NCBI GenBank assembly: GCA_002269645.1
Contig: NIVC01000356.1
Location: 1 to 64,000 of the forward strand
Length of the DNA: 64,000 bases
Direction of reading: 5' to 3'
Origin: Macrostomum lignano
Taxonomy: Eukaryota
Shown: positions 3,691 through 30,280 of the stretch, one piece after another
How the letters are laid out: each line of letters opens with the position of its first letter
Numbering within the stretch: position 1 is the first letter of the stretch
The notes under the pieces: model-generated
The model's database searches: none
Told to the model about the DNA's origin: nothing
The model's input: the letters and a program-made list of their open reading frames with translations, nothing else
Program-made: the position numbers and the translations under genes

Positions 3691-3811
3691 CTGCAATTGT
3701 TGCCATTGTTGATACGTATTAATACGTTTCTCGGGAGATTTTGTGGGATACCTAATGCACTTCAAGATTCTATGGGATTATAAGCTTTTAAACTTCAGGG
3801 CAATACCACTT

Positions 3812-4160
3812 AGGGCTGTGTGCACCCTGGCGCACTTTAAGCGACATAGGCACACAACCAGCGAGAGGCATTACTGCCCATTCCGCCGACTCCCCTGAGC
3901 AGGCACACAAGCGCGCGGATACGTACGCAGTCATACGCACAGGCACACACTCACACAGGAGTGTACAGCGGCCCTAACTTTATTTATCGTTAGGCATGTA
4001 CACTTCACTGTCCTTGGGGGTTGGCCCTCAAGGGTGTCAACTACACGAGCAGAGCCAAGCCGAGATTCCAATTCAGCCCCAAATTAATGTGATGACTGCA
4101 CTTGGAATCGAGCCTGGGCCGCTGGCACATTCCTGCCGCGCTGGACCACTGGGCTACGTC
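3812..4160 (-). mobile_element. tRNA-derived SINE, copy 1
   Basis: The minus-strand head has an A-box-like TAGCCCAGTGG and a B-box-like GGCTCGATTCC. The body (…GGCACACAAGCGCGCGGATACGTACGCAGTCATACGCACAGG…) recurs at 32.6, 57.3 and 58.9 kb. Confidence 0.85.
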
Positions 4161-10015: not shown

Positions 10016-11209
10016 AGCTTTGTCTTTGAAGGTGACTTAAATAATAGTGCAATTTATATCAATTGTATGCGGGTGTGCCTTGAGGCGAGGGGCTTCGCTT
10101 AGTAGGGTGGTCTGGGCACGCTCTTGCCTATTGCCTCTTATTACCAAAAATTGCAACAAATTAAACAGCAGTAGCCAATAGTAGAGCGTATTTTTTAAAC
10201 TATAAAAAAGCGCTATTTAAAGTCTACGAAAACGGTATTTGTACTTTAACAATTATTCAATTCCATCCGTGAGTTTAGAAAACGTTTCTCAGAACGTATT
10301 TTATACTTTAAAATCTCAAGAAATAACAAATAGTGGGCCGATAGAATAAAACAGCTGAGTAATAAACACATCTTGATCAGCGCCAATATCACTAATTTTA
10401 TTCTATGTGTTATCACACATATTTAAGGCTCAAAAATTTGATTTTACGTGTATGATACTGCCTGTCCGTGTAACAGTTAATCCGGCGCGTACGATGTGTC
10501 TCAACTGAGTCCAGGGTGCCAGTAGCTTGGCGCCAAGAGCAGAATATGTTTATGTCAACATATAAATATATTGTGAAACTAGTAAAATTACAGTAACAGG
10601 GGTGCCATGCAGCACCATAGGAGTTGCGCATAGATGGAAGTAGGAGCGAGGCTGCTTCGGCAAACACTTGTGCCAAGAGCATCTCGTGTCGTTGATTTCC
10701 GATGCCTCTGTGTAAGCTGAATACGCCCGAAAAATTTGTTTTAAGTTATTAATAGCCTAAATTGAATTCCGAACTGTAGCGAATTTTACTGGTGGGAGGC
10801 CAAGGGGTGAAATCTAAAGTTTACCCAAAAGTAATTAGCGAAACTACACTACTGTTCGTAAAAATTAAGTCTTATAAAGTATTGTCCTGCTCGAAACATT
10901 CTTTTAATGATTATGGGGTGTTCAACAGATCTCTCTCCACTCCATTAAACAAGACTCAAATCTCAGCTTCATACATGTAGGAGCAGGTCAATTAACTTAA
11001 TTAACAGCATCTCAAGAGGTACATGTAATTCACCTTTATTTGTCCCAAAGTTATCACATATATATGTAAAATACAGTTACATTCTATGCAAAACCTCTCA
11101 CTGCTGTATGATATTCTGCTACGAGCGTACAAGCCACAAGTAAGTATTATAGTTCTCTAGACGTTTATTAAAAAAGAGTTCTGTGGAAGAGTTTCTTCAC
11201 TAGGGAAAA

Positions 11210-14200
11210 TCAGTCCAAAACAAAGTCGGTCTCCTTCAGCCTCATCATTGTGTCGCCCACCAGTCGAATGTCGTTCATGTCAACGACAATGGAGGCGGCG
11301 ATGCGGATGAACAGCGAGTCCTCGATGTTGAGAATCAGCAGGTCCATTTTGAGCTTGTAGGCCAGGAATTTCCACATGTTGCTCTCGAATCTCGTCTCCT
11401 CGGCCTGCGATTTCAGGTTGCGGATGGGAAAGTAGAGAAGAAAGAGGAGAGGAGAGGAGAGGAGAGGATAGGAGAGGAGAAGAGAAGAGAGGAGAGGAGA
11501 GGAGAGGAGAGGAGAGGAGAGGAGAGGAGAGGAGAGGAGAGGAGAGGAGAGGAGAGGAGAGGAGAGGAGAGGAGAGGAGAGGAGAGGAGAGGAGAGAAGA
11601 GGAGAGGAGAGAAGAGGAGAGGAGAGGAGAGGAGAGGAGAGGAGAAGAGAGGAGAGGAGAGGAGAGGAGAGGACAGGAGAGGAGAGGAGAGGAAAAGAGA
11701 GGAGAGGAGAGGAGAGGAGAGGAGAGGAGAGGAGAGAGAGGAGAGGAGAGGAGAGGAGAGGAGAGGAGAGGAGAGGAGAGGAGAGGAGAGGAGAGGAGAG
11801 GAGAAGGAAAGAGAGGAGAGGAGAGGGAAAGAGAGGAGAGGAGAGGAGAGGAGAGGAGAGGAAAGGAGAAGGAAAGAGAGGAGAGGAGAGGGAAAGAGAG
11901 GAGAGGAGAGGAAAGGAGAAGGAAAGAGAGGAGAGGAGAGGAAAAGAGAGGAGAGGAGAAGGAAAGAGAGGAGAGGAGAGGGAAAGAGAGGGAGAGGAGA
12001 GGAGAGGAGAGAGAGAGAGGAGAGGAGAGGAGAGGAGAGGAGAGGAGAGGAGAGGAAGAGAGGAGAGGAGAGGAGAGGAGAGGACAGGAGAGAAGAGGAG
12101 AGGAGAGGAGAGAAGAGGAGAGGAGAGGAGAGGAGAGAAGAGGGAGGAGAGGAGAGGAGAGGAGAGGAGAGGAGAGGACAGGAGAGGAGAGGAGAGGAGA
12201 GGAGAAGAGAACTGAGGAGAGGAGAGGAGAGAAGAGGAGAGGAGAGGAGAGGAGAGAGAGGAGAGGAGAGGAGAGGAGAGGAGAGGAGAGAGAGGAGAAG
12301 AGAGAAGAGGAGAGGAGAGGAGAGAAGAGGAGAGGAGAGAGGAATGAAGAGAGGAGGTCACAAACTCGACCTCTCCAAAGAAGAACTCACAAACTTCTTG
12401 ATGGCGGGCCTCTGAAGATGCTGGGGTAGGCGGATGAGGCGCATGAACGGCGCCTGCATGTCAGCCGGCAGGGGCAGCAGGTCGGTGCCCCAGAATCCGG
12501 CCAGATAGCTGCTGGCCTCATCAGCAAGGCTGCGGCAGTATTCGTAAACTCTGTCCTGATGTGCATCGGTGAAGGTAACAGAGGTATGCTTCACTCATTC
12601 AGACAGTTGTTGAGCAGCCCCAATTGGCCAGCAGACACTCACCAGACCGCCGCAAATCTCGTCGATAAACTTCAAAGCTTCCGGGATGACGTAGAAGCTG
12701 CTGGTGTCCCTGGTGCCCAGGTAGGAGTACCTGTGCGGCAGCACCTCGTCATGGAGCAGCCAGGAGACAATGTCGGGTTTCATGGTGCTCACGTGAGCCT
12801 CGCCAATCCACATCAGAGCGACTGATTTCGGCAGGAAGTGCCACTTGTTGAGGTTGCCGAGGTAGAAGTCGGCGCCGATGTCCTCGATGTCCAGGTTTGG
12901 CACCTGGCCGATGGCGTGGGCCCCGTCGATGATCACCTTGATGCCCCGGCTGCGACACAGGGCTGTGAGCTCCTTCACTGGCATCAGGCAGGCCGTGGTG
13001 CTCGTGATATGGTCTAAATAGGGGATGTCGGATAAGCGTTGCTGGGAGCCCTAGCTGCGCAGTATCTGTCACCCTGCCTGTCACCTGTGTCACCCTGCCT
13101 GTCACCTGTGTCACCCTGCCTGTCACCTGTGTCACCCTGCCTGTCACATGTGTCACCATACCTGTCACCTGTGTCACCCTGTCTGTCACCTGTGTCACCC
13201 TGCCTGTCACCTGTGTCACCCTACCTGTCACCTGTGTCACCCTGCCTGTCACCTGTGTCACCCTGCCTGTCACCTGTGCCACACTACCTGTAACCTGTGT
13301 CACCCTGCCTGTCAACTGTGTCACCCTGCCTGTCACCTGTGTCACCCTGCCTGTCACCTGTGTCACCCTGCCTGTCACCTGTGTCACCCTGCCTGTCACC
13401 TGTGCCACACTACCTGTAACCTGTGTCACCCTGCCTGTCAACTGTGTCACCCTGCCTGTCACCTGTGTCACCCTACCTGTCACCTGTAACCTGTGTCACT
13501 CTAACTGTCACCTGTGTCACCCTACCTGTCACCTGTGTCACCCTACCTGTCACCTGTGTCACCCTACCTGTCACCTGTGTCACACTACCTGTCACCTGTG
13601 TCACTCTACCTGTCACCTGTCACCTGTGTCACCCTACCTGTCCCCTGTGTCATCCTACCTGTCACCTGTGTCACTCTACCTATCACCTGTGTCACCCTAA
13701 CTGTCACCTGTGTCACCCTACCTGTCACCTGTGTCACTCTAACTGTCACCTGTGTCACCCTACCTGTCACCTGTGTCACCCTAACTGTCACCTGTGTCAC
13801 CCTACCTGTCACCTGTGTCACCCTAACTGTCACCTGTGTCACCCTACCTGTCACCTGGGTCACCCACCTCATCGCCTGTCCCCCAGCTACATTCCTAAAT
13901 TCTCCAGTGGGGTCGCACCGAACACAGCAATTCGAACTTTCGGCCTCCTGTCCAGCTCCTGCTCGACCGCCCGCAGCACGTCCTCGCCCGACTTCAGCGG
14001 CAGTTGAAGCTTCGCTTCGGGCGCCTCCCCGGCCTCCGTAGCAGCCATCCTGACGGCGATGTAGGTCCAGGAGTTGATGAGCACCTGGGAGCCGGGCGGC
14101 TCCAGGGCCAACAGCCGGCGCAGAATGTTGGACACTCCGATGGTGACATTCTCCAGAAGGGCGCACTGCTGCGGCCGCACCCGAAGGCGCCTGGCGATGG

Positions 14201-15435
14201 CCTCCAGGCTGCTGTAGTTCAGATCCACCTGGCGGAGTCGAACGAACTCGTCGGCGAACGACTCGAACTCTTCGGTGAGTCTGCGGGCGGCAGATCAAAG
14301 GGAATGCTCAAGTAGGAGGTAGAGCTGTCTTATAAAATATTTGAAGCGGAAGGCTGAAGGCAGTGTCTGAAGGATCCGCTAAGGGTGTCTGTGCAGGATC
14401 CGCTAAGGGTGTCTGTGCAGGATCCGCTAAGGGTGTCTGTGGGATCCGCTAAGGGTGTCTGTGCAGGATCCGCTAAGGGTGTCTGTGCGATCCGCTAAAG
14501 TGTCTGTGCGATCCGCTAAGAGTGTTTGAGGGATCCGCTAAGGGTATTTGAGGGATCCGCTAAGGGTGTCTGTGGAATCCGCTAAGGGTGTCTGTGGGAT
14601 CCGCTAAGGGTGTCTGAAGGATCCGCCAAGGCTGTCTGAGGGATCCGCTAAGGGTGTCTGAAGGATCCGCCAAGGCTGTCTGTGGGATCCGCTAAGGCTG
14701 TCTGTGGGATCCGCCAAGGCTGTCTGTGGGATCCGCCAAGGCTGTCTGAGGGATCCGCTAAGGGTGTCTGAAGGATCCGCCAAGGCTGTCTGTGGGATCC
14801 GCTAAGGCTGTCCGTGGGATCCGCTAAGGGTGTCTGTGGGATCCGCTAAGGGTGTCTGAGGGATCCGCTAAGGGTGTCTGAGGGATCCGCTAAGGGTGTC
14901 TGAGGGATCCGCTAAGGGTGTCTGAGGGATCCGCTAAGGGTGTCTGAAGGATCCGCCAAGGCTGTCTGAGGGATCCGCTAAGGGTGTCTGAGGGATCCGC
15001 TAAGGGATGTCAGACGGCCGCCACAAATAATTTTAAGTATTAGAAACGTCCTTAGGACTTTTTAGAATCTCTGAGAACTCTGAGAATTTGAGAAATCCTA
15101 TCATTTCATGTATTCATTACTTCAAGGGATCAGGAATCATTTGTACCGCAGTTTGCAATCCAGAACGCTCTTCGGTGCCACCCCGAACGAGCCATTGTTC
15201 AGCATGAGGACGCCACGGCGAGCCACGTGGGGAAAGTGCTGCTCAAGCATCGGCCTGCCGAACTCAGCGGCTTGGAGCTGGCCGGATGTTTCTAAAAATA
15301 GAATTTTGAAGGGTGGATGAGGGGCGCTAATGAGGGGCGCTAATGAGCGGCGCTAATGAAGGGTTGTAATAAGAGGGGCAGTAATATTTTACTACATTCA
15401 AACTTGTTTCTCTTACCAGCTTCAGTTTCATCCAT
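11210..15435 (-). CDS. Class-V PLP-dependent C-S lyase-like enzyme (Egt2/hercynylcysteine sulfoxide lyase / L-cysteine desulfhydrase / IPN-epimerase-like), copy A, 6 exons, 418 aa
   Basis: Exons 15435-15417, 15291-15147, 14280-13919, 13013-12643, 12555-12391, 11404-11210 total 1257 nt and are phase-consistent. Motifs: EFGRPM…[51 protein letters not shown] (PLP Lys). Confidence 0.9.
11440..12350. repeat. (GAGAG)n pentamer array in lyase copy A intron 5
   Basis: Visible purine microsatellite; its mirror (CTCTC)n lies at 27400-28160. Confidence 0.95.
13060..13870. repeat. 21-bp minisatellite (sense GTGACACAGGTGACAGGTAGG) in lyase copy A intron 3
   Basis: Tandem units; mirror at 25750-26690. 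Confidence 0.95.
14360..15010. repeat. ~20-22-bp GGATCCGCTAAGGGTGTCTG minisatellite in lyase copy A intron 2
   Basis: Tandem units each with a GGATCC site; mirror at 24525-25260. Confidence 0.95.
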
Positions 15436-15879
15436 TGCCGTCAGAGTTGAAATAGACTTTGTTAATTTAAACTTAACTTTTTGAACTTTGAAGGCTAAAT
15501 CGAAGGCTAAAACTGGCCTTGTGCTGCCGCCTGAAGCAGTGTCGCCTCTTTTAAAAGAAAATTATTCAACAGCTTTGTAACTTCGAACCAGTGTTAAATT
15601 TTGTCCGCAGATAGATAAAACTGGCAAAAAGGCGTTGCTTTTGATCTTATCTACGACTTCGGCACCATAACTGCATAGCGAGAGACAGCCTGAGCTATCT
15701 GTTCACCAAAATCTACTACAAACGCGTGAAAAGCTTCGGCTTCTTGATTTCTCCAAGGTTGGCCTGAATTGCGGGAAAGCGCAGGTGAAACCTTAACAGC
15801 CAAGGCCATTAACTTCTGCGGTGCAAGTCAAGGACATTTTTGCTGCTAAAATGATTAAAATTGCCTACAAAATGACAGA

Positions 15880-16030
15880 CCCCCGATCCCAGATCCCCGA
15901 TCCCAGATCCCCGATCTCAGATCCCCGATCCCAGATCCCCGATCCCAGATCCCCGATCCCAGATCCCCGATCCCAGATCCCAGATCCCAAATCCTCGATC
16001 CCAGATCCCAGATCCCAAATCCTCGATCCT
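15880..16030. repeat. 14-bp CCCCGATCCCAGAT array
   Basis: Tandem units; a longer mirror lies at 23140-23435. Confidence 0.9.
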
Positions 16031-16320
16031 AAATAGCATAATAATATACTCGAATATTTTTGAAAATAGACAAGCAAACTTTATTAAAAATAAACAGCAA
16101 GGCACTAATTGTGTTAAACAAAAGCCAGGATTCACGATGTACTCTAAGAAAATTGATTGAGCATAGTTTTTCATGCATAATTTGAATGAGAAAAAGTCAG
16201 CAGAAACGTTCTTGTCCACAATAGTAAGGTTGCAGTCGGATTCTGATCAAAACCGCGGTTCGCAAGTGGCGCTCATTGGATGAAGTCCCGGACAGGACAG
16301 AAACGGCAGGCCGTGAACGG

Positions 16321-16675
16321 CAGTGTCAGGCAGTGTCAGGCAGTGTCAGGCAGTGTCAGGCAGTGTCAGGCAGTGTCAGGCAGTGTCAGGCAGTGTCAGG
16401 CAGTGTCAGGCAGTGTCAGGCAGTGTCAGGCAGTGTCAGGCAGTGTCAGGCAGTGTCAGGCAGTGTCAGGCAGTGTCAGGCAGTGTCAGGCAGTGTCAGG
16501 CAGTGTCAGGCAGTGTCAGGCAGTGTCAGGCAGTGTCAGGCAGTGTCAGGCAGTGTCAGGCAGTGTCAGGCAGTGTCAGGCAGTGTCAGGCAGTGTCAGG
16601 CAGTGTCAGGCAGTGTCAGGCAGTGTCAGGCAGTGTCAGGCAGTGTCAGGCAGTGTCAGGCAGTGTCAGGCAGTG
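16321..16675. repeat. (CAGTGTCAGG)35 perfect decamer array
   Basis: 35 identical units 16321-16670 followed by CAGTG. Confidence 0.98.
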
Positions 16676-19600
16676 CTCCATCCACGCAGCGCGGACGCTG
16701 TCCACATCGGTACAGGTGAAGCACTGCTTGATGACCCCGTTCCAATCAGCAATGCTGGGCAGCCGCCGGCCCATAGCGAAGATGCTGAGCGCCATACGCG
16801 GGAGGAGTACGCTACCGTAGCAGTCCTTTGGAGTTCGAGCAAAAGTTTTTTTGTTTAGGCAGCAAATGCAGCGGGTGAGCGATTTACCAGCGACATCAGT
16901 TATTAGGATTGGAGAAGGGTTCAGAAAACAAAATAGGAACAGAGTGGAAGAGAGTGGAAGAGAGTGGGAGAGAGTGGAAGAGAGTGGGAGAGAGTGGGAG
17001 AGAGTGGAACAGGAAAAATAATGGAGGGGCAAGTATATCAGAGCGGAGAAAGTCGAGAACGGGATATAAGTACATACCCTCATGCAAGTATTGATCAGTT
17101 AATCAAAAGATTACTGATCAGTGATTCAATTTCAATATCTAGCATTTCGCAGCCCTATAATGAGATTTTTACCTGCACCGTGAACTTCCTCGGCGACAGG
17201 TAAAGCTGCTGCAGTTTGTGCTTGGACTCTGCCAGCCGCTGCCAGCCCGGGGAGTCACTCCAGCACGGGAAGGTGACGAAGAACCAGCAAGCGCCGCTGG
17301 CATCTCTAGGAATAATCGAGGGGTGAAGGACTGAGATATTGGAACTCATAGTGCTAATAATAGTGCTTGACTGTGGAGTGTGTACCTGCAGGCTTCTAGG
17401 CAGGAGTACAAAGTTCATGTGATTGAATTACGTGCTCATCGGAGACAAACAGACATATCTTAATACTGATTTACTACTGTATGTCATCCGGATGTACTAA
17501 GCATGTCATCCCGGATGTACTAAAAAAGCATGTCATCCCAGATGTACTAAGCATGTCATCCCGGGATGTACTAAGCATGCCACCCCATGATGTACTAAGC
17601 ATGCCACCCCTGGATGTACTAAGCATGCCACCCCGGGATGTACTAAGCATGTCATCCTGGATGTACTAAGCATGCCACCCCGGGATGTACTAAGCATGTC
17701 ATCCTGGATGTACTAAGCATGCCATCCGGATGTATTCAACATTGATACCGGATGCATTCAACATCCGTTCCGGATGTACACATAGAGTATACTCAAACAC
17801 GTTCAAATACCTGTTCAAATAGTCCAACACCTTGTTGGCGACTTGCAACATTAGCTCCTCGATAAAAGGTGGATTAACTGTCCAGCCTCCTGGATAGTGG
17901 CTGAAGTCCACGGCGAAGAAGTCGCCAAGGCTGCCAAACGGAGCGTCCGTGTCCGGGAACAGGCTGCAAAATGCGACGCCCGGTTTTCCTAGCAGTTTCG
18001 AATTCAAAGGCGATGCGAATCCTTCATAGCGCACGCCCATGTGTTCGTACAGTGCGTGGTGCACTGTGACCGGGTCGCCCCACTGCAGGCTGCCTGTGCC
18101 CAGAGTCTCGTACCGTAACAGCATCCGGGCCGTAGCTTTTAAGCCGAAATTTCTTACCAAAAAGCTGATTCTAGGACAGCATGGACTGGCGTAGCCATCA
18201 GACAAACTTAAAGAGTTTTGGTGACCTGCAGAGAGGTTGAGGTTTGAAAATCAATCAATAAATCAAATCAACTGCCGAACTAAAACAGTCTCAGAAAATA
18301 TATTAAGTACACAGTGTGCTTTAACTCACAGCCAATAAGCAGCTGTCCTTCAACCTCCGATTCCTTGCACTCGCTGTCATCTCCGAGGTCACCATTCTGT
18401 TGGCGTCGCCGTTCCAAGAAGACCACACTGACGCCGCCTGCATTGCCTGGCTGCCGATCTGGTGATTGGATCAGCTGGTCGATTGTCTGCTCAAACTGAG
18501 ACACCGCGTCTACCAGGACCCGAGCGATTCGCTGCGCGTTGCTTCGGGACGCGCTGAACTTCTTTTCCACGCACTCATCGATCTGTCGGGGAAAAAAGTT
18601 TTCTTGCTCAATGGAGACAGCCAACTCGGAGAGTAGGCAATTAAGATTGGCCTCTGAGCTGACCTCTAAGCATTCAAACATTTACGTATGATACGTACGT
18701 ATGCTACTAGGCTTCTTCCACAGACAGCGATTGAGAATTGACATTGTAACACGATTTAAATGTGTAAAAGAATGCTTAAAACCCCAAGACTGCGGATGGC
18801 CTGCTCTGCAGGTCATGGTCTCATATCTATGGTCTGCGGCTCAATTTGCTGCTGATATGTTAAAACATTTCTAATGAGTCTTAGTTTGCGGCTGTGGCCT
18901 GCATGGCCATGAAAAATTCGGTTGTTTTAAGTAACTTTTTTGTTCCTTTTGAACATCTGATTTTTTCTATACTATGGCGCAACAGGGATACTAAACGAGT
19001 TATGAATTGTGAATATATTTTCTCAACAGTCATTGGAACAGTGAATAAAAGTTCAAAGACATAGTGAAAAATTTACGAAAACAAGTAATACGAACAAGTT
19101 TAAAATGATAAGCGAGTAATTCAACAACGACCAACAAACATCGATAACACCAAGTACGAGTAGCAGTCATAGGCATAACAGCAGGTGAGTCACAATTTAA
19201 CAAATAGTTATACATGTAATTAATTTTGATTGGCATGCCAATCTCCGAAGCAGGGCACAGCGCAAAGACCTGGATTTCCCTGGCAGTGATCGCAGCAATA
19301 GACAGTTTTCTGTATCGTGCTGCTAATTACGCGTGCACTCGTGGCCTGGACATCTATATAAGTGATGTAACCACGCTCTGGTCGCGGGATAGGGCATGGG
19401 AACTTTTTCGTAAGTGCCTCCTATCCCGTGTACCCCCCTGCACAGAGCTGTCGAGACTCGGCCAGGTCTCCGACCAGGCCTGGAGACTCCCGCTCTGCTG
19501 CACCCCCCCTGCTGCCTTGGTTCCGTCTCCCCTGCCGCCACACCTGCCTTTCCGGAGCCCCCTATCCCTCTCTGTACTTCCCCCTCTACCTTATCTCCCC

Positions 19601-22421
19601 TGTGCTCCACCCTAGTCTTCTTGCACTTTCCCTATCTTCCCTCTTTTTGTCTCCCTCTGCACTCTTTTCCTGCGCTGTCCCCTCTTTCCCTGTGTCTACT
19701 TACAGTATTTTGTGTGCTCACCGCCTCCCCATCCCCTCTCAAACTCCCAAACGGTGACGCAAGTCGTGTGACCCCTTCTCCCCCTCGGTGACTCATCGAT
19801 GACTCATCCCCCTCTCTTGCGCAACCTTTTCTCACGCCATTGTTCTTCCCCCCAAATTTCTCATGCGACACCCACCCCACCTCCGCTTCTATTGTTCTCG
19901 TTTTTGATTCTTTTGTTCTCTCGACCCCCACCAATTATCACATTTCCTCCGATTTTCTCTTTCTTTTGTTCTCGTTTTCGCACCTAATTATCACCTTTTC
20001 TCCAATGTTTACTTTTCCATTGTTCTCAGTTTTCCCCAATTATCCCCGATTTCCAATTCCTTTGTTCTCGACCCCGGCCCCATTGTTCTCAATGTTTGCT
20101 TGCGCAACACTTTCGCGACCTCCCGCTGCGCCAATTATCCCCCCACCCCGCCTCCGGATTGCGCAATTTCCCTATTTCTCATGTTGCTATGCCGGTCTCA
20201 TGCTTCTCATCATGACTCATTCTGACGTCATTCTGCCGGCAGCCAATCAGAGAGAGGGAGTCATGGAAACGACCTTGGAGCGGCGGCTGGGAAGGCTATA
20301 AAAGGAAGCGATTTCGGCATGAGAATCCTCAGCTCTTTGGCCACGGGTGCCCACCTTCGGGCTCCTAGTCTTTCTTTAGACTTGCCGTCAGACTGAGTTC
20401 TGACCCATTCGTCTATAAGACGAATCCCTGCCGGTCCGCGGTCTGTTACCGCCAAGTTATCTTCAGCTCCCCAAGTGAGCTCGCCTATCGGCCAGCGGTC
20501 TGACACCGCCCAGCATCATCAGCTTCGCCTGATCTACACCAGCGCCTCGTCGCTTCAGCGCTTCGCCGCTTCACTGTCTGCCTGACTGCAGCCTACAGCC
20601 GCCCTCGGTCACTCCGCCTCTCTCTCTCTCTCTGTGCAGCTGCCGGTAAGTTCCTATTACTGATTTGTGCTCTAATTGCCTTTGCTTATCCGGAGTTTGC
20701 CTATTTTTCCATTGTCTGATTAGAGAGCTGAGCCAGTTGTGATACCGTACCTTTTGCTGTATTTTTACTCAATAGTGAAGCCGCCTAATTGCCTGCTTAT
20801 TTGCCTAAGGGCCTAATTATTAACTATTAACTAACCTCATCATTATTCACTCTTTCACCATCATTTCACTCATGGCTTGCTAAGCCTTTCTCCCGGGGTG
20901 GCAAAGCATAAGGAAGTTGGGTAAGCTAATGGCCTCTCCCCGTGCAAAGCCCGCCTGTGAGTGCGTGCTGCGGGGCCGCGTGTGCGTGCAGTAGAGGGAT
21001 TAGCGAGTCTTGGCACAGAATGGCAGTAGGAAGGTTGCAACCCCATGCTGACGCGTCCCTTCGCCCTGAGCAATCTAAACCATAGACAGTACATGTTCGC
21101 CTCATACTACTCTTAGTAATCAAAGTCGCAAGTCAGCCTCGCTCACAGCCACAAAGGATCCCCTGCTGAGAAATCCTCCAGATTGAGCCCAGAGTTCCCG
21201 ATCATGCCCCAAGCAGAGTCCCTGTACTCGGCTGCATGTGTCTCCCCTGTTAGCCTAAATCTCCTGGTAACCATCCCAGGCGGGGCTCTAGCCTCGAGAG
21301 GTCTAGTAGAAAGATCCAGGTGCGCCAGGTCACATAGAGTGGTGGCAGCCACTCGGTCATACTATGACCGAGTGACCAACTATTGCACCTTGGCTACAGG
21401 TGGGCTCCATGTGGGTCCTTGGCCCTCTGGTCACGAAGCGCTACCAAAGCTATCAATCATGTGGGCGGGACAGTCTGGTGCTGGAGGTCCGTCAGGTCAT
21501 TGCCCGGTCATAGGCAGCCTACGGTCATTGCCCCCTCTAGTCATGCGTTCGTCTCTCTACGGAGCGGACAGGCGACAAGGGCGGTTACATCATAAGCACT
21601 AAAAACAGACTTTTGAACCCCTCAACGTCAAAATTGAATAGCGATTTGTCAGTTTTGATAGCTCCTAGTTCAAAATTGAACGCAAAAAGGTGTAGAACGC
21701 TCGTTTTCATCTATTTGCTAAAGGCCGGCTATCTCTGGGGCATTTAGAATGCTCCAGAGAACGCAGCGTTGAATAGACTTTTGCCCAGTCCCATTTCTCA
21801 AGAGCAAATTACTAAATGGACCAGCGATACAACAGCTACGTTCTTTACCGACCCCAGCTCATTTCTAGGAAAATTCAGTGTGCACGTAGCGTCCTTTGTA
21901 CCTTGGGTTCATGAGTCTTGCTTGTATGGAGCACAATATGCAGCTTTAGGAGTCGAGGCTCATTGGGGACTTGGCTGAAATGCCGTGGCTTAAGGGGGTT
22001 GCTCAGATATTTTGCTAATTGCTAGGAAACATACAACAAAGCAAAAATGGCAGTAAAAATACGCATGACTAATACAGACCAACTTTTGGCTAGCGAACGT
22101 TTCAGTGCCCAATAGACCTGGGAAAATTGGTAGTGACAGCGAACGAGCTCCACAACATTCTTCGCTGCGACTCTCCAGTTGAAAGGACAGGAGCCAGCGA
22201 TCAAAGATATTCCTGGCCTCGGCCTGGTCCTGCTCTCGAGTCCGATGCATTGGTCCGTCGCCCACTTGAACAAACACCCGACAAAGTTGCCGAGTCAGGC
22301 GCCAGAGGTTCAACTCGCGGAGCAGCAGCTCTGATGCGACGATTCGCTCTACCTCGACCAGTTGAAGTTGATCGGCACCGGCAGCTTTGCTCTTTTGTAA
22401 CTCAACCGCAGCTTGAGACAT
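16646..22421 (-). CDS. PCIF1-like: PCIF1/CAPAM-like SAM-dependent N6-adenine methyltransferase lacking a WW domain, 5 exons, 455 aa
   Basis: Exons 22421-22118, 18665-18330, 18225-17811, 17305-17173, 16825-16646 total 1368 nt and are phase-consistent. Motifs: NIFDRWLL (helical domain), MLLRYE, EGFASPLN, FCSLFPDTDAPFGSLGDFF, NPPFIEELM, FFVTFPCWSDSP. There is an in-frame TGA six codons upstream of the ATG. Confidence 0.85.
17480..17740. repeat. 21-bp minisatellite (CATCCCGGATGTACTAAGCAT-like) in PCIF1-like intron 3
   Basis: Tandem units visible. Confidence 0.9.
19363..21592 (+). mobile_element. 2230-bp solo-LTR-like element in PCIF1-like intron 1 (antisense)
   Basis: Ends TGATGTAACC…GGTTACATCA (10-bp perfect inverted ends, TG…CA). 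TSD TAAG at 19359-19362 and 21593-21596. Internal CCAAT/TATA promoter and no convincing ORF. Confidence 0.8.
20213..20303 (+). promoter_or_regulatory. Pol II promoter module inside the LTR-like element
   Basis: TGACTCA (AP-1-type) 20213, TGACGTCA (CRE) 20223, CCAAT 20243, TATAAAA 20297. Further TGACTCA at 19789 and 19800; splice donor G|GTAAGT at 20646. Confidence 0.65.
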
Positions 22422-23857
22422 TTTCAATGAGTCAACTTTTCAATGAGTCAATTCAATTCTTGTCCAGCACAGATTGCTAATCAATATTATTTATAGCTCT
22501 CAGAGGGGGGGGGGGGCTCGTCTAGCCAAAAAGCGTAGTACATATGCGCGAGCTATAATCACTAAAATAATTCCAGTCTAGGCGCAAAGCTCATGTAGCA
22601 AACCGGTAAATGGGCGGAATGACTGTTTGTATTCTCAGTGCTCATTTTTTTAGCTGAAAGCACTCTGGCTGTACGCTGGGTTGGCAAGAATACACTTGCC
22701 TTAGGAGAGGAAGGGAGAGAGAAGGGACAGACGAGACTACGAGCTCATGGAGCACCGCTTCCTTCCGAAAGAGAGGAGAGCTTACTGTGTTACACAAGTA
22801 CATGTAGTCAAGGCTCGTAGCGCACACTCTCATCTGCAGTTTGTGTCGACATTTCTTTGAAAATAAGCAGCAAAAGTAACCTACTATAATGACATCTGCT
22901 TACGTTTGTCTTGTTTAATAGCTCGTTCAGACCGTTTTTAAATTAGGCCAACGTTTTGCCACTGCGCGGTTTGTCATTTGTTCAGTTCATCGAGTCGCCT
23001 GGTTTTATGGCTCATTCGATGGGGCATTAACGCGCCATTGTTTAATGAACAGCAGTCTTAACACAAATTCAAATGAGCACTACTAGGCACCCTCTTATAT
23101 TGTATCAGGTTTTGGCACCCTGTTCCAGCGCCCCTGGTCGGGGATCTGGGATCGGGGATCTGGGATCGGGGATCTGGGATCGGGGATCTGGGATCGGGGA
23201 TCTGGGATCGGGGATCTGGGATCGGGGATCTGGGATCGGGGATCTGGGATCGGGGATCTGGGATCGGGGATCTGGGATCGGGGATCTGGGATCGGGGATC
23301 TGGGATCGGGGATCTGGGATCGGGGATCTGGGATCGGGGATCTGGGATCGGGGATCTGGGATCGGGGATCTGGGATCGGGGATCGGGGATCGGGGATCTG
23401 GGATCGGGGATCTGGGATCGGGGATCTGGGATCGGGGAAAAAATCTCTTTGACTTGTACCGCAGAAGTTAATGGCGTTGGCTGTTTAGGTTTCAACCGCG
23501 GACTTCCCCGCAAATTCAGGCCAATCTCGCATAAATTCAGGCCATTCTCGGGTTTTCACGCATGTTTGTTGTAGATTTCGGTGAACAGATTAGCTTAGGC
23601 TGTCTTTCGCTATACATTTTTGGTATCAAACTCTCGCTGATAAGATCAATAGCAACGACTTTTTGCCAGTTTTATCTATCAGACAAAAGTTATGACCAGT
23701 TCGATGTTTAAATAACAAAGTAGGTGAAAAAAATTCTTTTAAAAGAGGAGGCAGTGCTTCAGATCTCAGCACAGGGTCCGTTCTTCGCTTCGATTTAGCT
23801 TTCAAAATTAAAAAGGTTAAGTTTATATTTACAAATTCTATTTTAACTCCGACAGCG

Positions 23858-26800
23858 ATGGATAAAACTGAAGCTGGTAAGTGAAATAAGTGAAAATGAG
23901 ACATGTTAAACCTCAGCGCCCCCCTCTCATTAGCGCCCCTCATTAGCGCCCCTTTCATTAGCGCCCCCTCTCAGTAGCGCACCTCGTTAGCGCCCCTCAT
24001 AAGCGCCCCCTCTCATTAGCGCCCAATTTCTAATTAGGGCCCCTCTCATTAGCGCCCCTTTCATTAGCGCCCCTTTCATTAGCGCCCCTCATTAGCGCCT
24101 CTCGTTAGTGTTCTCCTCATTAGCGCCCCTCATTAGCGCCCCTCTCATTAGCACCCCTCATTAGCGCCCAATCTCATTAGCGCCCCTCATTAGCGCCCCT
24201 CATTAGCGCCCCTCATCCACCCTTCAAAATTCTATTTTTAGAAACATCCGGCCAGCTCCAAGCCGCTGAGTTCGGCAGGCCGATGCTTGAGCAGCACTTT
24301 CCCCACGTGGCTCGCCGTGGCGTCCTCATGCTGAACAATGGCTCGTTCGGGGTGGCACCGAAGAGCGTTCTGGATTGCAAACTGCGGTACAAATGATTCC
24401 TGATCCCTTGAAGTAATGAATACATGAAATGATGAGATTTCTCAAATTCTCAGAGTTCTCAGAGATTCTAAAAAGTCCTAAGGACGTTTCTAATACTTAA
24501 AATTATTTGTGGCGGCCGTCTGACATCCCTTAGCGGATCCCTCAGACACCCTTAGCGGATCCCTCAGACAGCCTTGGCGGATCCTTCAGACACCCTTAGC
24601 GGATCCCTCAGACAGCCTTAGCGGATCCCACAGACAGCCTTGGTGGATCCTTCAGACACCCTTAGCGGATCCCACAGACACCCTTAGCGGATCCCACAGA
24701 CACCCTTAGCGGATCCCTCAAATACCCTTAGCGGATCCCACAGACACCCTTAGCGGATCCCTCAAATACCCTTAGCGGATCCCACAGACACCCTTAGCGG
24801 ATCCCTCAAATACCCTTAGCGGATCCCTCAAATACCCTTAGCGGATCCCGCAGACACCCTTAGCGGATCCCTCAGACACCCTTACTTGATCCCACAGACT
24901 GCCTTAGCGGATCCCTCAGACAGCCTTAGCGGATCCCTCAGACACCCTTAGCGGATCCCTCAGACACCCTTAGCGGATCCCTCAGACACCCTTAGCGGAT
25001 CCCACAGACAGCCTTGGCGGATCCTTCAGACACCCTTAGCGGATCCCTCAGACACCCTTAGCGGATCCCACAGACACCCTTAGCGGATCCTGCACAGACA
25101 CCCTTAGCGGATCCTGCACAGACAGCCTTAGCGGTTCCTTCAGACACCCTTAGCGGATCCCTCAGACAGCCTAAGCGGATCCCACAGACAGCCTTAGCGG
25201 ATCGCACAGACACCCTTAGCGGATCCTGCACAGACAGCCTTAGCGGTTCCTTCAGACACTGCCTTCAGCCTTCCGCTTCAAATATTTTATAAGACAGTTC
25301 TTCCTCCTACTTGAGCATTCCCTTTGATCTGCCGCCCGCAGACTCACCGAAGAGTTCGAGTCGTTCGCCGACGAGTTCGTCCGACTCCGCCAGGTGGATC
25401 TGAACTACAGCAGCCTGGAGGCCATCGCCAGGCGCCTTCGGGTGCGGCCGCAGCAGTGCGCCCTGCTGGAGAATGTCACCATCGGAGTGTCCAACATTCT
25501 GCGCCGGCTGTTGGCCCTGGAGCCGCCCGGCTCTCAGGTGCTCATCAACTCCTGGACCTACATCGCCGTCAGGATGGCTGCTACGGAGGCCGGGGAGGCG
25601 CCCGAAGCGAAGCTTCAACTGCCGCTGAAGTCGGGCGAGGACGTGCTGCGGGCGGTCGAGCAGGAGCTGGACAGGAGGCCGAAAGTTCGAATTGCTGTGT
25701 TCGGTGCGACCCCACTGGGGATTTTGGGAATGTAGCTGGGGGACAGGCGATGAGGTGGGTGACCCAGGTGACAGTTAGAGTGACACAGGTGACAGATAGG
25801 GTGACCCAGGTAACAGGTAGGGTGACACAGGTGATAGGCAGGGTGACACAGGTGACAGTTAGGGTGACACAGGTGACAGGTGACAGTTAGAGTGACACAG
25901 GTGACACAAGTGACACGTAGAGTGACATATGTGACAGGCAGGGTGACACCGGTGACAGGTAGGGTGACACAGGTGACAGGTAGAGTGACACAGGTTACAG
26001 GTGGAGTGACACAGGTTACAGGTAGGGTGACACAGGTGACAGGTAGGGTGACACAGGTGACAGGTAGGGTGACACAGGTTACAGGTAGGGTGACACAGGT
26101 GACAGGTAGAGTGACACAGGTGGACAGGTAGGGTGACACAGGTTACAGGTAGGGTGATACAGGTGACAGGTAGAGTGACACAGGTGACAGGTATAGAGTG
26201 ACACAGGTGACAGGTAGAGTGACACAGGTGACAGGTAGAGTGACATAGGTGACAGGTAGGGTGACACAGGTGACAGGTTGGGTGACACAAGTGACAGGTA
26301 GGGTGACACAAGTGACAGGTAGGGTGACACAGGTGACAGGTAGGGTGACACAGGTGACAGGCAGGGTGACACAAGTGACAGGTAGGGTGACACAGGTGAC
26401 AGGCAGGGTGACACAGGTGACAGGCAGGGTGACACAGGTGACAGGTATGGTGACACAGGTGACAGGCAGGGTGACACAGGTGACAGGCAGGGTGACGCAG
26501 GTGACAGGCAGGGTGACACAGGTGACAGACAGGGTGACACAGGTGACAGGTATGGTGACACAGGTGACAGGCAGGGTGACGCAGGTGACAGGTAGGGTGA
26601 CACAGGTGACAGGCAGGGTGACACAGGTGGACAGGTAGGGTAACACAGGTGACAGGCAGGGTGACACAGGTGACAGGCAGGGTGACAGATGCTGCGCAGC
26701 TAGGGCTCCCAGCAACGCTTATCCGACATCCGCTATTTAGACCATATCACGAGCACCACGGCCTGCCTGATGCCAGTGAAGGAGCTCACAGCCCTGTGTC

Positions 26801-28391
26801 GCAGCCGGGGCATCAAGGTGATCATCGACGGGGCCCACGCCATCGGCCAGGTGCCAAACCTGGACATCGAGGACATCGGCGCCGACTTCTACCTCGGCAA
26901 CCTCAACAAGTGGCACTTCCTGCCGAAATCAGTCGCTCTGATGTGGATTAGCGAGGCTCACGTGAGCACCATGAAACCCGACATTGTCTCCTGGCTGCTC
27001 CATGACGAGGTGCTGCCGCACAGGTACTCCTACCTGGGCACCAGGGACACCAGCAGCTTCTACGTCATCCCGGAAGCTTTGAAGTTTATCGACGAGATTT
27101 GCGGCGGTCTGGTGAGTGTCTGCTGGCCAATTGGGGCTGCTCAACAACTGTCTGAATGAGTGAAGCATACCTCTGTTACCTTCACCGATGCACATCAGGA
27201 CAGAGTTTACGAATACTGCCGCAGCCTTGCTGATGAGGCCAGCAGCTATCTGGCCGGATTCTGGGGCACCGACCTGCTGCCCCTGCCGGCTGACATGCAG
27301 GCGCCGTTCATGCGCCTCATCCGCCTACCCCAGCATCTTCAGAGGCCCGCCATCAAGAAGTTTGTGAGTTCTTCTTTGGAGAGGTCGAGTTTGTGACCTC
27401 CTCTCTTCATTCCTCTCTCCTCTCCTCTTCTCTCCTCTCCTCTCCTCTTCTCTCTTCTCCTCTCCTCTCCTCTCCTCTCCTCTCCTCTCCTCTCCTCTCC
27501 TCTCCTCTCCTCTCCTCTCCTCTCCTCTTCTCTCCTCTCCTCTCCTCTTCTCTCTTCTCCTCTCCTCTCCTCTCCTCTCCTCTCCTCTCCTCTCCTCTCC
27601 TCTCCTCTCCTCTCTTTCCTTCTCCTCTCCTCTCTTTTCCTCTCCTCTCCTCTCTTTCCTTCTCCTTTCCTCTCCTCTCCTCTCTTTCCCTCTCCTCTCC
27701 TCTCTTTCCTTCTCCTTTCCTCTCCTCTCCTCTCCTCTCCTCTCCTCTCTTTCCCTCTCCTCTCCTCTCTTTCCTTCTCCTCTCCTCTCCTCTCCTCTCC
27801 TCTCCTCTCCTCTCCTCTCCTCTCCTCTCCTCTCCTCTCCTCTCCTCTCTTTCTCTCTCCTCTCCTCTCTTTCCTTCTCCTCTCCTCTCTTCTCCTCTCC
27901 TCTCCTCTCCTCTCCTCTCCTCTCCTCTCCTCTCCTCTCCTCTCCTCTCCTCTCCTCTCCTCTTCTCTCCTCTCCTCTCCTCTTCTCTCTTCTCCTCTCC
28001 TCTCCTCTCCTCTCCTGTCCTCTCCTCTCCTCTCCTCTCCTCTCCTCTCCTCTTCTCTCCTCTCCTCTCCTCTCCTCTTCTCTCCTCTCCTCTCTTTCCT
28101 TCTCCTCTCCTCTCTTCTCTTCTCCTCTCCTATCCTCTCCTCTCCTCTCCTCTCCTCTTTCTTCTCTACTCTCCCATCCGCAACCTGAAATCGCAGGCCG
28201 AGGAGACGAGATTCGAGAGCAACATGTGGAAATTCCTGGCCTACAAGCTCAAAATGGACCTGCTGATTCTCAACATCGAGGACTCGCTGTTCATCCGCAT
28301 CGCCGCCTCCATTGTCGTTGACATGAACGACATTCGACTGGTGGGCGACACAATGATGAGGCTGAAGGAGACCGACTTTGTTTTGGACTGA
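23858..28391 (+). CDS. Class-V PLP-dependent C-S lyase-like enzyme, copy B, 6 exons, 418 aa
   Basis: Exons 23858-23876, 24242-24386, 25342-25703, 26741-27111, 27199-27363, 28197-28391. By eye it differs from copy A at E3K and a G/S change in exon 4 (IGEAH vs ISEAH), plus silent changes. Confidence 0.9.
23920..24215. repeat. CATTAGCGCCCCT-type minisatellite in lyase copy B intron 1
   Basis: An expanded array here versus only ~3 units in copy A (15320-15360). Confidence 0.9.
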
Positions 28392-29759
28392 TTTTTCCTA
28401 CTGAAGAAACTCATCTAGAGAACTCTAAAGAACTTTAAAGAAGGTACTAAAGGTACGAAGAACATAATGCAGCAGTGAGAGTTGTCATCAGAGTTTTAAC
28501 TGTTATACATGATTTTCACTTTGGGGCATTTTTTGGGAGATAAAAAATGTAGACTTCTTGAGATGCTGCTATTAGCTACTCACTTTGATTAACCTGCTTC
28601 TATGAAGCCGAGATTTGAGTCTTATTCAAAGGAGGGGAGAGAGATCGGTTTAACACACCTAATCATTTAAAGAATGTTTTGCACAGGAAAATTCTCCACA
28701 AGCATCCATTTTTACTAAAAGTAGCGTAGTTTGACTTTTACTTTCGGGTAGTTTTCGACCCTTCCCCCCCCGCAGTGAGACTCGCTACATTTCGGAATTC
28801 AATTTAGGCAATTTATAACTAAACAAGTGGAGCAACATTTTCGGACGGATTCAGCTTACACAGAGGCATTGGATTTCAACGGCAAAGTCAACGACACAGG
28901 ATACTCGTGCTAATTGTTATGACACGAGTGTAATTTGCCTGGCACCAGCTTCTTATGCGCGACTCCTGCTCCAATGCACTGGGGGGGGGGGGGGCAAAGC
29001 ACCATCTTTGTCAACAATCTATTAATTCTGTTTATAAATCCAAACAAGTTCTTTAAGACCGCGTCGTCAACGAAAAAGTCCTCGGATTGCACTCGGTTAA
29101 ACTTGAATTTATTTGCTCTAATTATTGCTATGGAAATTGCGCAGTTGACTGAGATTTGGCATGTAAACCGGTGGAGGCTCAGGGCCTTTAATCTGGCTTT
29201 TATTTCTTTTCGCCTTACGTTTCTTATTGCCTACCGGTAGACACCCATGGAGTACTGGGATACTAGAATCTGGTTAGGAAGCATCACTATGACAAGGAAT
29301 TTGAAGGCCATCGAGTTTTAAAGCTTAATCTATAAGACTATCTCCAACTCCAATCCAGTCGGTATGTTTAGCACGCCATGACCGGAGGAGCCGAAGGGAG
29401 TGTGGGCTCGGTGGCCACTGGGTTCGGCTGTCCCAGAAACTGGGCCGCCGCCCGCTGCACGCAGCGCCCCGCCAGAGAGGGAGTTGGAAACGCAGGAGAT
29501 TAAAGACTGCTACACAACAAAGTAATTTTTTCGCGCAGCGCACTTGCAATCGCGACAGTTTAACTTTCCAGCCAAGCCACTCCGTCCCGTCCCGAGTAAG
29601 CGCTGCTTAAGCATTGGCCCGCGATGCCAGGGGTTACCGGGTGCTTAGCGGCTTTGTTGGAATTTGAAATTTGAAACAAATATTAGGGTTCTTTCTAATT
29701 TCGAATTTTGCACGATTCAGCCTCATCCTGGTACAGGAAATGCCTGGCAACCACCAATC

Positions 29760-30280
<521 letters not shown>

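What the first reader, a model, noticed from the sequence alone, without database searches (positions are those of the whole stretch)
10680..28900. 18-kb palindromic cassette with a sharp gene-conversion footprint
Seen: ~5.4 and ~5.8 kb arms in inverted orientation around a ~7.1 kb spacer. From ~15345 to the stop codon (11210), and in its mirror, unique intron and exon sequence is nearly identical. Immediately outside (3' of TGA, and exon 1/upstream) the arms are clearly diverged, by eye roughly one difference in four to five bases. Inference: an old inverted duplication whose gene bodies are homogenised by conversion while flanks and promoters diverge, resembling palindrome-arm conversion on sex chromosomes. 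Flip-flop inversion of the spacer is also predicted.
Basis: partly seen in the sequence, partly recalled or inferred. Interest (0 to 1): 0.7.

Follow-up and report, generated by a model that had tools for sequence, protein, structure and literature searches.

The report
Inverted gene pair homogenised by conversion
Two mirror-image copies of a flatworm enzyme gene keep their gene bodies almost identical by copying sequence from one another while their flanks have drifted about 25% apart; the pattern is real but is a well-known kind of event.

Summary
The window is Macrostomum lignano contig NIVC01000356.1 (Mlig_3_7 assembly). Arm A (10643-16100, gene on the minus strand) and arm B (23157-28946, plus strand) each carry an intact six-exon, 418-aa class-V PLP aminotransferase / C-S-lyase-like gene. 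They lie inverted around a 7.06-kb spacer filled by a PCIF1-like gene. In unique sequence the core (stop codon to intron 1) differs at 14 of 1761 sites (0.8%). The homologous flanks differ at 239 of 967 sites (24.7%; Fisher p = 3e-97). Both steps are sharp. One lies within about 4 bp of the stop codon, the other at a 13-bp minisatellite in intron 1. Introns and synonymous sites are homogenised too, so selection alone cannot explain it. The same palindrome is present in two other copies of the locus in the same assembly (contigs 282 and 281), with different conversion mosaics. In contig 281 the promoter and exon-1 flank is 100% identical between arms. Copy B is broken there (in-frame stop) and in contig 282 (5' deletion). 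This fits recurrent arm-to-arm gene conversion after an old inverted duplication, as at the Drosophila Amy and Hsp70 pairs. No flipped spacer was seen in four contigs. It is a new member of a known kind, of modest interest.

The parts
10643..16100 (-). Arm A: the whole homologous block (3' flank, gene copy A, 5' flank including promoter region and exon 1).
   Evidence: Global alignment to the reverse complement of arm B; blastn.
23157..28946 (+). Arm B: the whole homologous block, a mirror image of arm A.
11207..15368 (-). Homogenised core of arm A: exons 2-6, introns 2-5 and the 3' part of intron 1. Unique sequence is 0.4-1.6% different from arm B.
24174..28394 (+). Homogenised core of arm B.
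10643..11206 (-). Diverged 3' flank / 3' UTR of copy A (27.7% mismatches against B). AATAAA lies 40 nt after the stop.
28395..28946 (+). Diverged 3' flank of copy B. No AATAAA/ATTAAA within 600 nt. The same B-type flank occurs in contig 282 (15 differences in 398 sites).
15369..16100 (-). Diverged 5' flank of copy A: the rest of intron 1, exon 1 (15435-15417, MDETEA), promoter region and a 14-bp minisatellite (15876-16029). 21% mismatches against B.
23157..24173 (+). Diverged 5' flank of copy B: 14-bp minisatellite (23138-23438), promoter region, exon 1 (23858-23876, MDKTEA) and an expanded 13-bp minisatellite in intron 1 (23921-24214).
11210..15435 (-). Gene copy A, class-V aminotransferase, 418 aa, intact. 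Exons 15435-15417, 15291-15147, 14280-13919, 13013-12643, 12555-12391, 11404-11210. All introns are GT-AG.
   Evidence: PF00266, 47 bits against a cut-off of 21.5; 3 aa differences from P0001, M. lignano.
23858..28391 (+). Gene copy B, 418 aa, intact. Exons 23858-23876, 24242-24386, 25342-25703, 26741-27111, 27199-27363, 28197-28391. Differs from A at E3K and G246S plus 3 synonymous sites.
16101..23156 (.). Spacer, 7.06 kb, not repeated.
16646..22421 (-). PCIF1_WW-domain gene (440-aa annotated product) that fills the spacer. It is head-to-head with copy B and upstream of, and in tandem with, copy A.
   Evidence: Gene call in L003 (L003 = window 13780-38391); PF12237 hit of exon 17699-18205.
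11443..12339 (.). (AGAGG)n in intron 5 of A (mirror 27415-28174 in B). 897 versus 760 bp.
13067..13869 (.). 21-bp minisatellite in intron 3 of A (mirror 25753-26687 in B). 803 versus 935 bp.
14363..15011 (.). 22-bp minisatellite in intron 2 of A (mirror 24522-25259 in B). 649 versus 738 bp.

Best explanation
A single gene for a class-V PLP enzyme was duplicated in inverted orientation around the neighbouring PCIF1-like gene. This happened long before the three M. lignano subgenomes separated: flank divergence is p = 0.25, about 0.30 substitutions per site after Jukes-Cantor correction. Since then, double-strand breaks in one copy have repeatedly been repaired from the other copy on the same chromosome (non-reciprocal, arm-to-arm gene conversion). 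This resets the gene body, introns included, to near identity. Conversion tracts cannot extend into sequence that is already too different or is interrupted by length differences. The edges therefore became self-sharpening barriers. One is at the stop codon, where the two 3' UTRs are unalike. The other is at an intron-1 minisatellite of very different length in the two arms. What is shown: the step profile, the homogenised introns and synonymous sites, the different mosaics in the three subgenome copies, and arms within a locus being more alike than the same arm between loci. What is inferred: the break-repair mechanism, the reason for the edge positions, and any role of selection in holding the 3' edge at the stop codon.
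For: (1) Step profile: core 14/1761 mismatches against flanks 239/967, p = 3e-97. The steps are sharp to a few bases. (2) It is not selection. 520 bp of unique intron lies inside the core, and only 3 synonymous differences occur in 1257 nt of CDS, against about 25% in the flanks. (3) The flanks are true homologues of the same gene. Exon 1 keeps its ATG, 19 coding nt and GT donor in both diverged flanks, in register with the core. (4) The structure does not rest on one contig. The window is NIVC01000356.1, and contigs NIVC01004096.1, NIVC01000282.1 and NIVC01000281.1 carry the same arrangement. This matches the three subgenomes reported for this assembly (PMC10733133). (5) Concerted evolution. 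In the exon 4-5 segment, A-B within the window differ at 3/727 sites. A(window)-A(282) differ at 10, B(window)-B(282) at 12 and A(282)-B(282) at 15. In the exon-3 segment the arms of 281 differ at 5 sites and the arms of the window at 6, against 14 for A(window)-A(281). Four sites are shared only by the two arms of 281. (6) Tract ends differ between loci. In contig 281 the arms are 100% identical over about 1.1 kb covering the 14-mer minisatellite, promoter, exon 1 and intron 1. This is the stretch that is 21-23% diverged in the window. That flank is A-type apart from about 50 bp of B-type at exon 1. Exon 2 and intron 2 of B(281) are about 12% from every other copy. (7) The 3' step at the stop codon is shared by contigs 356 and 282, and A-type flank begins at the stop in 281 too, so this edge is old and stable. 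(8) GC3 of the converting gene is 0.81 against 0.59 in the PCIF1 exons next door. This fits GC-biased conversion but does not prove it. (9) The same pattern is documented for the Drosophila Amy and Hsp70 inverted pairs, with a model of ineffective conversion at block edges (PMC3924832; PMC2588116).
Against: All four contigs come from one assembly of one inbred line, so there are no population data, raw reads or sister species. Polishing of a polyploid long-read assembly could exaggerate identity between arms, for example the 100% stretch in contig 281. The between-locus comparisons rest on few sites (3-17 differences per segment) and some site patterns conflict: B(window)-B(281) differ at 7 sites, about the same as A-B within the window at 6. 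The 5' and 3' halves of the core differ in divergence only marginally (10/798 against 4/963, p = 0.06). High GC3 could reflect expression-linked codon usage rather than biased conversion.
Confidence: 0.87

Rival explanations
1. One recent replacement: the gene body of one copy was overwritten once (a single long conversion or a template-switch re-duplication) shortly before or after the subgenomes split. Nothing has happened since.
For: One 4.2-kb tract with two sharp ends would be the simplest footprint of a single event. The 3' edge is identical in contigs 356 and 282.
Against: The three loci have different mosaics. In 281 the 5' flank is 100% homogenised and there is a 12% island at exon 2. 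In the window the arms are closer to each other (3/727) than to their counterparts in 282 (10-12/727). Divergence varies from 0.4% to 1.6% along the core. Several events after the subgenome split are therefore needed.
Confidence: 0.07
2. Assembly artefact: the palindrome, or the near identity of its arms, was produced by mis-joining haplotypes or subgenomes, or by consensus polishing with reads mapped to the wrong arm.
For: Mlig_3_7 is a fragmented, over-sized assembly of a neopolyploid with known copy-number errors (PMC10733133). Contig 4096 ends inside the spacer. The arms are full of tandem repeats.
Against: Fold-back artefacts give palindromes whose homology runs on outward. Here homology stops at 10643/28946 and the outer flanks are unrelated. 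The arms have arm-specific 3' flanks that recur in a second contig (B-type flank 15/398 between 356 and 282). Minisatellite lengths differ, and 14 single-base differences include sites that separate A from B in both contigs. Three contigs show both arms around PCIF1. Polishing cannot create a jump from 100% to about 72% within a few bases.
Confidence: 0.04
3. Purifying selection alone keeps the two gene bodies alike after an old duplication, without any sequence exchange.
For: Both copies are intact and differ at only 2 of 418 residues.
Against: Unique intron sequence and synonymous sites are as alike as replacement sites. The identity ends at a point inside an intron and at the stop codon, rather than tracking exon borders.
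Confidence: 0.01

Closest known systems
Drosophila Amy-p/Amy-d inverted amylase pair (concerted evolution confined to the gene; PMC3924832, PMC2588116)
   Same: Two tightly linked paralogues lie in mirror orientation. The duplication is old, the gene region is kept near-identical by ectopic gene conversion, and the 5' and 3' flanks evolve independently. Divergence rises steeply at the block edges.
   Different: Here the homogenised tract is mostly intron (four of five introns, full of minisatellites) rather than coding sequence. Exon 1 and the start codon lie outside the tract. A whole unrelated gene (PCIF1-like) sits between the copies. The comparison is among three subgenomes of one neopolyploid rather than among species.
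Drosophila Hsp70Aa/Hsp70Ab palindromic pair (PMC3924832)
   Same: An inverted pair whose paralogues within a lineage are more alike than orthologues between lineages. The inverted orientation favours conversion over copy-number change.
   Different: Hsp70 genes have no introns and a short spacer. No population evidence such as shared polymorphisms is available for the flatworm locus.
Arm-to-arm gene conversion in sex-chromosome palindromes (human Y P1-P8 and X palindromes; named from general knowledge, not tested here)
   Same: Intrachromosomal, non-reciprocal exchange between inverted arms around a unique spacer. Crossing over between arms would invert the spacer.
   Different: Those arms span tens of kb to Mb, are over 99.9% identical along their whole length and lie on non-recombining sex chromosomes. 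Here the arms are about 5.5 kb, only the central 4.2 kb is homogenised, and the animal is a hermaphrodite without sex chromosomes.
Gene / pseudogene conversion pairs such as human CYP21A2/CYP21A1P (general knowledge)
   Same: In contigs 282 and 281 the B copy is dead (5' deletion; in-frame stop) yet still near-identical to the live copy over long stretches. A dead copy can therefore act as conversion partner.
   Different: Those pairs are tandem, not inverted. No transfer of a defect into the live copy is seen here.

Membership tests
Concerted evolution of an inverted paralogue pair by ectopic gene conversion (Amy/Hsp70 type) | Two linked paralogues in inverted orientation | tested here: met
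   Gene A is on the minus strand at 15435-11210 and gene B on the plus strand at 23858-28391, 7 kb apart.
Concerted evolution of an inverted paralogue pair by ectopic gene conversion (Amy/Hsp70 type) | Paralogue divergence far lower in a central tract than in homologous flanks, also at silent and intron sites | tested here: met
   0.8% against 24.7%, p = 3e-97. Introns are included, and there are 3 synonymous differences in 1257 nt.
Concerted evolution of an inverted paralogue pair by ectopic gene conversion (Amy/Hsp70 type) | Paralogues within one lineage more alike than the same paralogue between lineages | tested here: met
   Window A-B 3/727 against A-A 10 and B-B 12. Arms of contig 281 differ at 5/421 against A(window)-A(281) at 14. 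The site numbers are small and one comparison (B-B 7 against A-B 6) is neutral.
Concerted evolution of an inverted paralogue pair by ectopic gene conversion (Amy/Hsp70 type) | Mosaic tracts with different end points in different lineages | tested here: met
   In contig 281 the 5' flank is 100% identical between arms, with an A/B-type switch at exon 1 and a 12% island at exon 2. In the window the step lies in intron 1.
Concerted evolution of an inverted paralogue pair by ectopic gene conversion (Amy/Hsp70 type) | Polymorphisms shared between paralogues in a population | not testable with these tools
   No population or read data are available.
Sex-chromosome ampliconic palindromes | Near-perfect identity (over 99.9%) along the entire arm up to the spacer | tested here: not met
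   The inner 0.7 kb and outer 0.55 kb of each arm are 21-28% diverged.
Sex-chromosome ampliconic palindromes | Location on a sex-specific, non-recombining chromosome | not testable with these tools
   M. lignano is described as a simultaneous hermaphrodite (PMC10468722 title and abstract), so no sex chromosome is expected. The chromosome carrying this contig was not determined.
Flip-flop (invertible) segment between inverted repeats | Both orientations of the spacer relative to the outer flanks exist | tested here: inconclusive
   Contigs 356, 4096, 282 and 281 all read arm B - PCIF1 - arm A - A-type 3' flank. No flipped form was seen, but four assembled contigs of one line cannot exclude rare isomers.
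Class-V aminotransferase fold (Pfam PF00266) | Profile match above the curated cut-off | tested here: met
   47 bits against a cut-off of 21.5. The closest solved relatives are class-V aminotransferase/cysteine desulfurase 8dl5 (E = 2e-33) and the C-S lyase Egt2 5uts (E = 2e-23).
Class-V aminotransferase fold (Pfam PF00266) | PLP-binding lysine and enzymatic activity | not tested
   A candidate lysine lies in GNLNKW (paralogue P0004 has GNLHKW). It was not checked against a structure, and the substrate is unknown.

The most novel reading that the evidence does not exclude
The 3' edge of the tract sits exactly at the stop codon in every copy because selection holds it there. On this reading the two copies are one enzyme under two regulatory regimes. 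Copy B shares a divergent promoter region with PCIF1 and lacks a canonical poly(A) signal. Copy A lies downstream of PCIF1 and has AATAAA. Conversion serves to keep the protein identical while the UTRs and promoters stay distinct. The three subgenomes then form a natural triplicate in which conversion has preserved copy B once and failed twice, which would allow the rates of conversion and pseudogene decay in a new polyploid to be measured.
Probability: 0.12. Interest if true: 0.5.

Novelty: new member of a known kind. Interest (0 to 1): 0.3.

Why it matters
It is a clean, well-bounded example of concerted evolution in a flatworm. The held literature has no paper on concerted evolution of Macrostomum protein-coding paralogues. 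It comes with a built-in comparison, because three subgenome copies of the same palindrome carry different conversion mosaics and different fates of copy B. It has practical consequences. Copy-specific assays (RNAi, in situ probes, CRISPR guides, RNA-seq quantification) for this gene can only use exon 1 and the UTRs. Divergence-based dating of M. lignano paralogues will underestimate the age of such pairs by more than 30-fold. It does not reveal a new mechanism.

Tried and rejected
Instead I used members of the 90% cluster of P0001, which were accepted. (2) A protein search with the PCIF1 exon, meant to fetch loci centred on the spacer, returned a single UniRef entry without a contig, so nothing was gained. 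As a result the B arm of contig 281 is seen only up to exon 3, and the outer flank of contig 282 only for about 600 bp. (3) No tRNA genes are in the window, and no other large dispersed repeat apart from tandem arrays. The flanks therefore do not look like a repeat family within the about 130 kb examined. (4) Selection as the sole cause was rejected on intron and synonymous identity. (5) Fold-back mis-assembly was rejected because homology ends at the arm ends and the arms have their own recurring flanks. (6) A two-age structure of the core (3' half younger than 5' half) is only marginal (p = 0.06) and is not claimed. (7) The divergent exon-2 island of B(281) could be an unconverted relic of the old B sequence or decay of a pseudogene. 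At 12% it lies between the 1-9% divergence among loci and the 25% flank divergence, and I could not decide. (8) Sister-species comparison was not possible because none of the searchable collections holds other Macrostomum genomes.
Full report
WHAT IS THERE. The window is positions 1-64000 of contig NIVC01000356.1 of the Macrostomum lignano assembly Mlig_3_7 (GCA_002269645.1). Locus L003, fetched from that contig at 13780-38391, matches window 13780-38391 at 100%. A global alignment of 9500-17500 against the reverse complement of 22000-30000 shows the following:
- Identity is at random level (about 40%) outside 10643/28946 and between 16100 and 23157.
- It is 63-79% over 10643-11206.
- It is 98.5-100% in unique sequence from 11207 to 15368 (mirror 28394-24174).
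- It is 65-81% from 15369 to about 16100.
The arms are therefore 5.46 and 5.79 kb and the spacer 7.06 kb, as reported.

THE GENE. Each arm holds a six-exon gene with canonical GT-AG introns and an intact 418-codon reading frame.
- Copy A, minus strand: exons 15435-15417, 15291-15147, 14280-13919, 13013-12643, 12555-12391, 11404-11210.
- Copy B, plus strand: exons 23858-23876, 24242-24386, 25342-25703, 26741-27111, 27199-27363, 28197-28391.
The product is a class-V PLP-dependent aminotransferase-fold protein (PF00266, 47 bits against a cut-off of 21.5). Its nearest solved relatives are a class-V aminotransferase/cysteine desulfurase (8dl5, E = 2e-33) and the C-S lyase Egt2. It differs at three residues from M. 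lignano protein PAA86363.1 (P0001). The two copies differ at five of 1257 coding bases. Two are replacements: E3K in exon 1, which lies outside the homogenised tract, and G246S. Three are synonymous. Introns 1, 2, 3 and 5 are largely tandem repeats: a 13-mer, a 22-mer, a 21-mer and (AGAGG)n. Array lengths differ between the arms. The spacer is almost filled by a PCIF1_WW-domain gene on the minus strand (16646-22421). That gene is head-to-head with copy B and directly upstream of copy A.

THE STEP. Counting only unique sequence, the core has 14 mismatches in 1761 aligned sites (0.8%) and the two flanks 239 in 967 (24.7%). The Fisher exact test gives p = 3e-97. The 3' step is within about 4 bp of the stop codon. 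Identity is perfect for 224 bp inside it, and 6 of the first 38 bases outside differ, followed by indel-rich sequence. The 5' step is in intron 1, at a 13-bp minisatellite with 3.6 copies in A and about 20 in B. Exon 1, the start codon and the promoter region lie in the diverged part. They are still clearly homologous and in register, because the ATG, the 19 coding bases and the GTAAG donor are conserved. The flanks are therefore part of the original duplication and not chance neighbours. About 520 bp of unique intron and all but three synonymous sites are identical inside the core, so selection on the protein cannot be the cause.

EVIDENCE FROM OTHER COPIES OF THE LOCUS. Members of the 90% protein cluster of P0001 led to three more contigs of the same assembly.
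- NIVC01004096.1 (L004) is 99.5-100% identical to the A side of the window and ends inside the spacer.
- NIVC01000282.1 (L001) is 95-99.8% identical with structural differences.
- NIVC01000281.1 (L002) is about 90-97% identical.
This fits the published finding that about 70% of Mlig_3_7 is present as three paralogous blocks, read as subgenomes S, L1 and L2 that differ by 1.4-1.6% at single bases (PMC10733133). All contigs have the same layout: arm B reversed, PCIF1, arm A, A-type 3' flank, then SH3BGR and CybS genes.

Four results bear on the mechanism.
1. The 3' step at the stop codon is also present between the arms of contig 282. The A-type flank begins at the stop codon in contig 281 as well. 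The B-type 3' flank of the window recurs in contig 282 (15 differences in 398 sites) while being about 27% from every A flank. The A/B flank distinction and this edge therefore predate the split of the subgenomes.
2. Arms are more alike within a locus than the same arm is between loci. In the exon 4-5 segment the counts are A-B (window) 3/727, A(window)-A(282) 10, B(window)-B(282) 12 and A(282)-B(282) 15. In the exon-3 segment the two arms of 281 differ at 5/421 and the two arms of the window at 6, against 14 for A(window)-A(281). Four sites are shared only by the two arms of 281. The numbers are small, and one comparison (B-B 7) is neutral.
3. Tract ends differ. In contig 281 the arms are 100% identical over about 1.1 kb that covers the 14-mer minisatellite, promoter region, exon 1 and intron 1. 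This is exactly the part that is 21-23% diverged in the window. At sites that tell A from B, this stretch is A-type except for the last 50 bp or so at exon 1, which is B-type. Just downstream, exon 2 and intron 2 of B(281) are about 12% from all other copies.
4. Copy B has different fates. It is intact in the window. In contig 282 it has lost about 2.4 kb, comprising the promoter-proximal region and exons 1-3, with one deletion end in the 21-mer minisatellite. In contig 281 it carries an in-frame TAA in exon 2. The dead copies remain 98-100% identical to their live partners over long stretches.

MECHANISM. The best reading is an old inverted duplication followed by repeated non-reciprocal repair of one copy from the other. 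The flank divergence of p = 0.25 corresponds to about 0.30 substitutions per site by my Jukes-Cantor arithmetic, roughly 35 times the core value. Some conversion events must postdate the subgenome split. The edges are where exchange can no longer propagate: a length-polymorphic minisatellite on one side and an already unalike, indel-rich 3' UTR on the other. This is the 'ineffective conversion at the edges' model of Osada and Innan (PMC2588116). The inverted orientation allows conversion without copy-number change (PMC3924832). GC3 of 0.81 in this gene against 0.59 in the neighbouring PCIF1 exons fits GC-biased conversion but could have other causes. The break-repair mechanism and the reasons for the edge positions are inferred, not shown.

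RIVALS.
- A single replacement event does not explain three different mosaics.
- A mis-assembly is unlikely. Homology stops at the arm ends, and each arm has its own flank that recurs in another contig. Array lengths and 14 point differences distinguish the arms, and three contigs show both arms around PCIF1. All data nevertheless come from one assembly of one inbred line, and polishing may have inflated identity locally.
- Selection alone is excluded by the intron and silent-site identity.

FLIP-FLOP. Crossing over inside the core would invert the spacer together with the inner flanks, and would join an A-type 5' flank to a B-type 3' flank. In all four contigs the copy downstream of PCIF1 has the A-type 3' flank. 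No inversion has therefore become fixed in any subgenome. Rare isomers cannot be excluded without reads.

COMPARISON AND NOVELTY. The closest known cases are the inverted Amy-p/Amy-d and Hsp70Aa/Ab pairs of Drosophila, where concerted evolution is confined to the gene and the flanks evolve independently (PMC3924832; PMC2588116). The differences are of degree:
- the tract here is mostly intron and minisatellite;
- it leaves out exon 1;
- a whole gene lies between the copies;
- the replicate lineages are subgenomes of a neopolyploid.
Sex-chromosome palindromes share the arm-to-arm exchange, but not the scale, the whole-arm identity or the chromosomal setting. I found no paper describing this locus or concerted evolution of Macrostomum protein-coding paralogues. 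The finding is real and correctly interpreted, but it is a new member of a known kind. I score interest at 0.3.

Noticed in passing
window 45848-51147: A 5.3-kb array of a 16-bp unit (AGCTGTTAGACACTAT, about 350 copies, 91% matches). The whole window is packed with minisatellites of period 5-65 (at least 25 arrays between 31 and 64 kb).
   Followed up: partly
window 15317-15363, 23921-24214 and 40556-41048: Related GGGGCGCTA-type 13/14/17-bp minisatellites occur in intron 1 of both gene copies and again 12 kb outside the palindrome. This suggests a dispersed minisatellite family.
   Followed up: no
window 11170-11165 (copy A) versus 28392-29000 (copy B): Copy A has AATAAA 40 nt after its stop codon. 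Copy B has no AATAAA or ATTAAA within 600 nt, so the two copies probably use different 3'-end signals.
   Followed up: partly
L002 (NIVC01000281.1) about 13368-21528: An insert of about 8.2 kb with long gag-like and pol-like reading frames (reverse transcriptase / integrase type) on the minus strand, 220 bp downstream of the stop codon of copy A. It is absent from the window and from contig 282 and looks like an LTR retrotransposon. It was not assembled or analysed further.
   Followed up: partly
L001 (NIVC01000282.1) 2947-3040; window equivalent about 23530-25900: The B arm of this subgenome copy lacks about 2.4 kb (promoter-proximal region and exons 1-3). One deletion end lies in the 21-bp intron minisatellite.
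   Followed up: yes
L002 about 1000-985 (B arm, exon 2): In-frame TAA (GQLQ to GQP*) in copy B of contig 281. The same arm is 100% identical to its partner just upstream.
   Followed up: yes
window 17699-18205 (minus strand): An exon of the spacer gene matches PCIF1_WW (PF12237, 90 bits) and contains the NPPF motif, which from general knowledge is typical of the cap-adenosine methyltransferase family.
   Followed up: partly
window 23780-28391: The database protein for copy B on this contig (PAA84868.1, 'partial', 444 aa) is longer than the 418-aa model that fits all splice sites and the A copies. The annotation of copy B probably retains intron sequence. No gene was listed for copy A in the part of the contig that I could see.
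   Followed up: no
window 3793-3940 and 57350-57655: A short dispersed repeat (85-94% identical), also present in L001 at 20539-20866.
   Followed up: no
proteins P0002 and P0003 (UniRef entries from an older M. lignano annotation): These models fuse the PCIF1 3' exons or unrelated sequence to the aminotransferase. P0002 carries the MDKTEA exon 1 with A-like upstream sequence, matching the mosaic seen in contig 281.
   Followed up: partly
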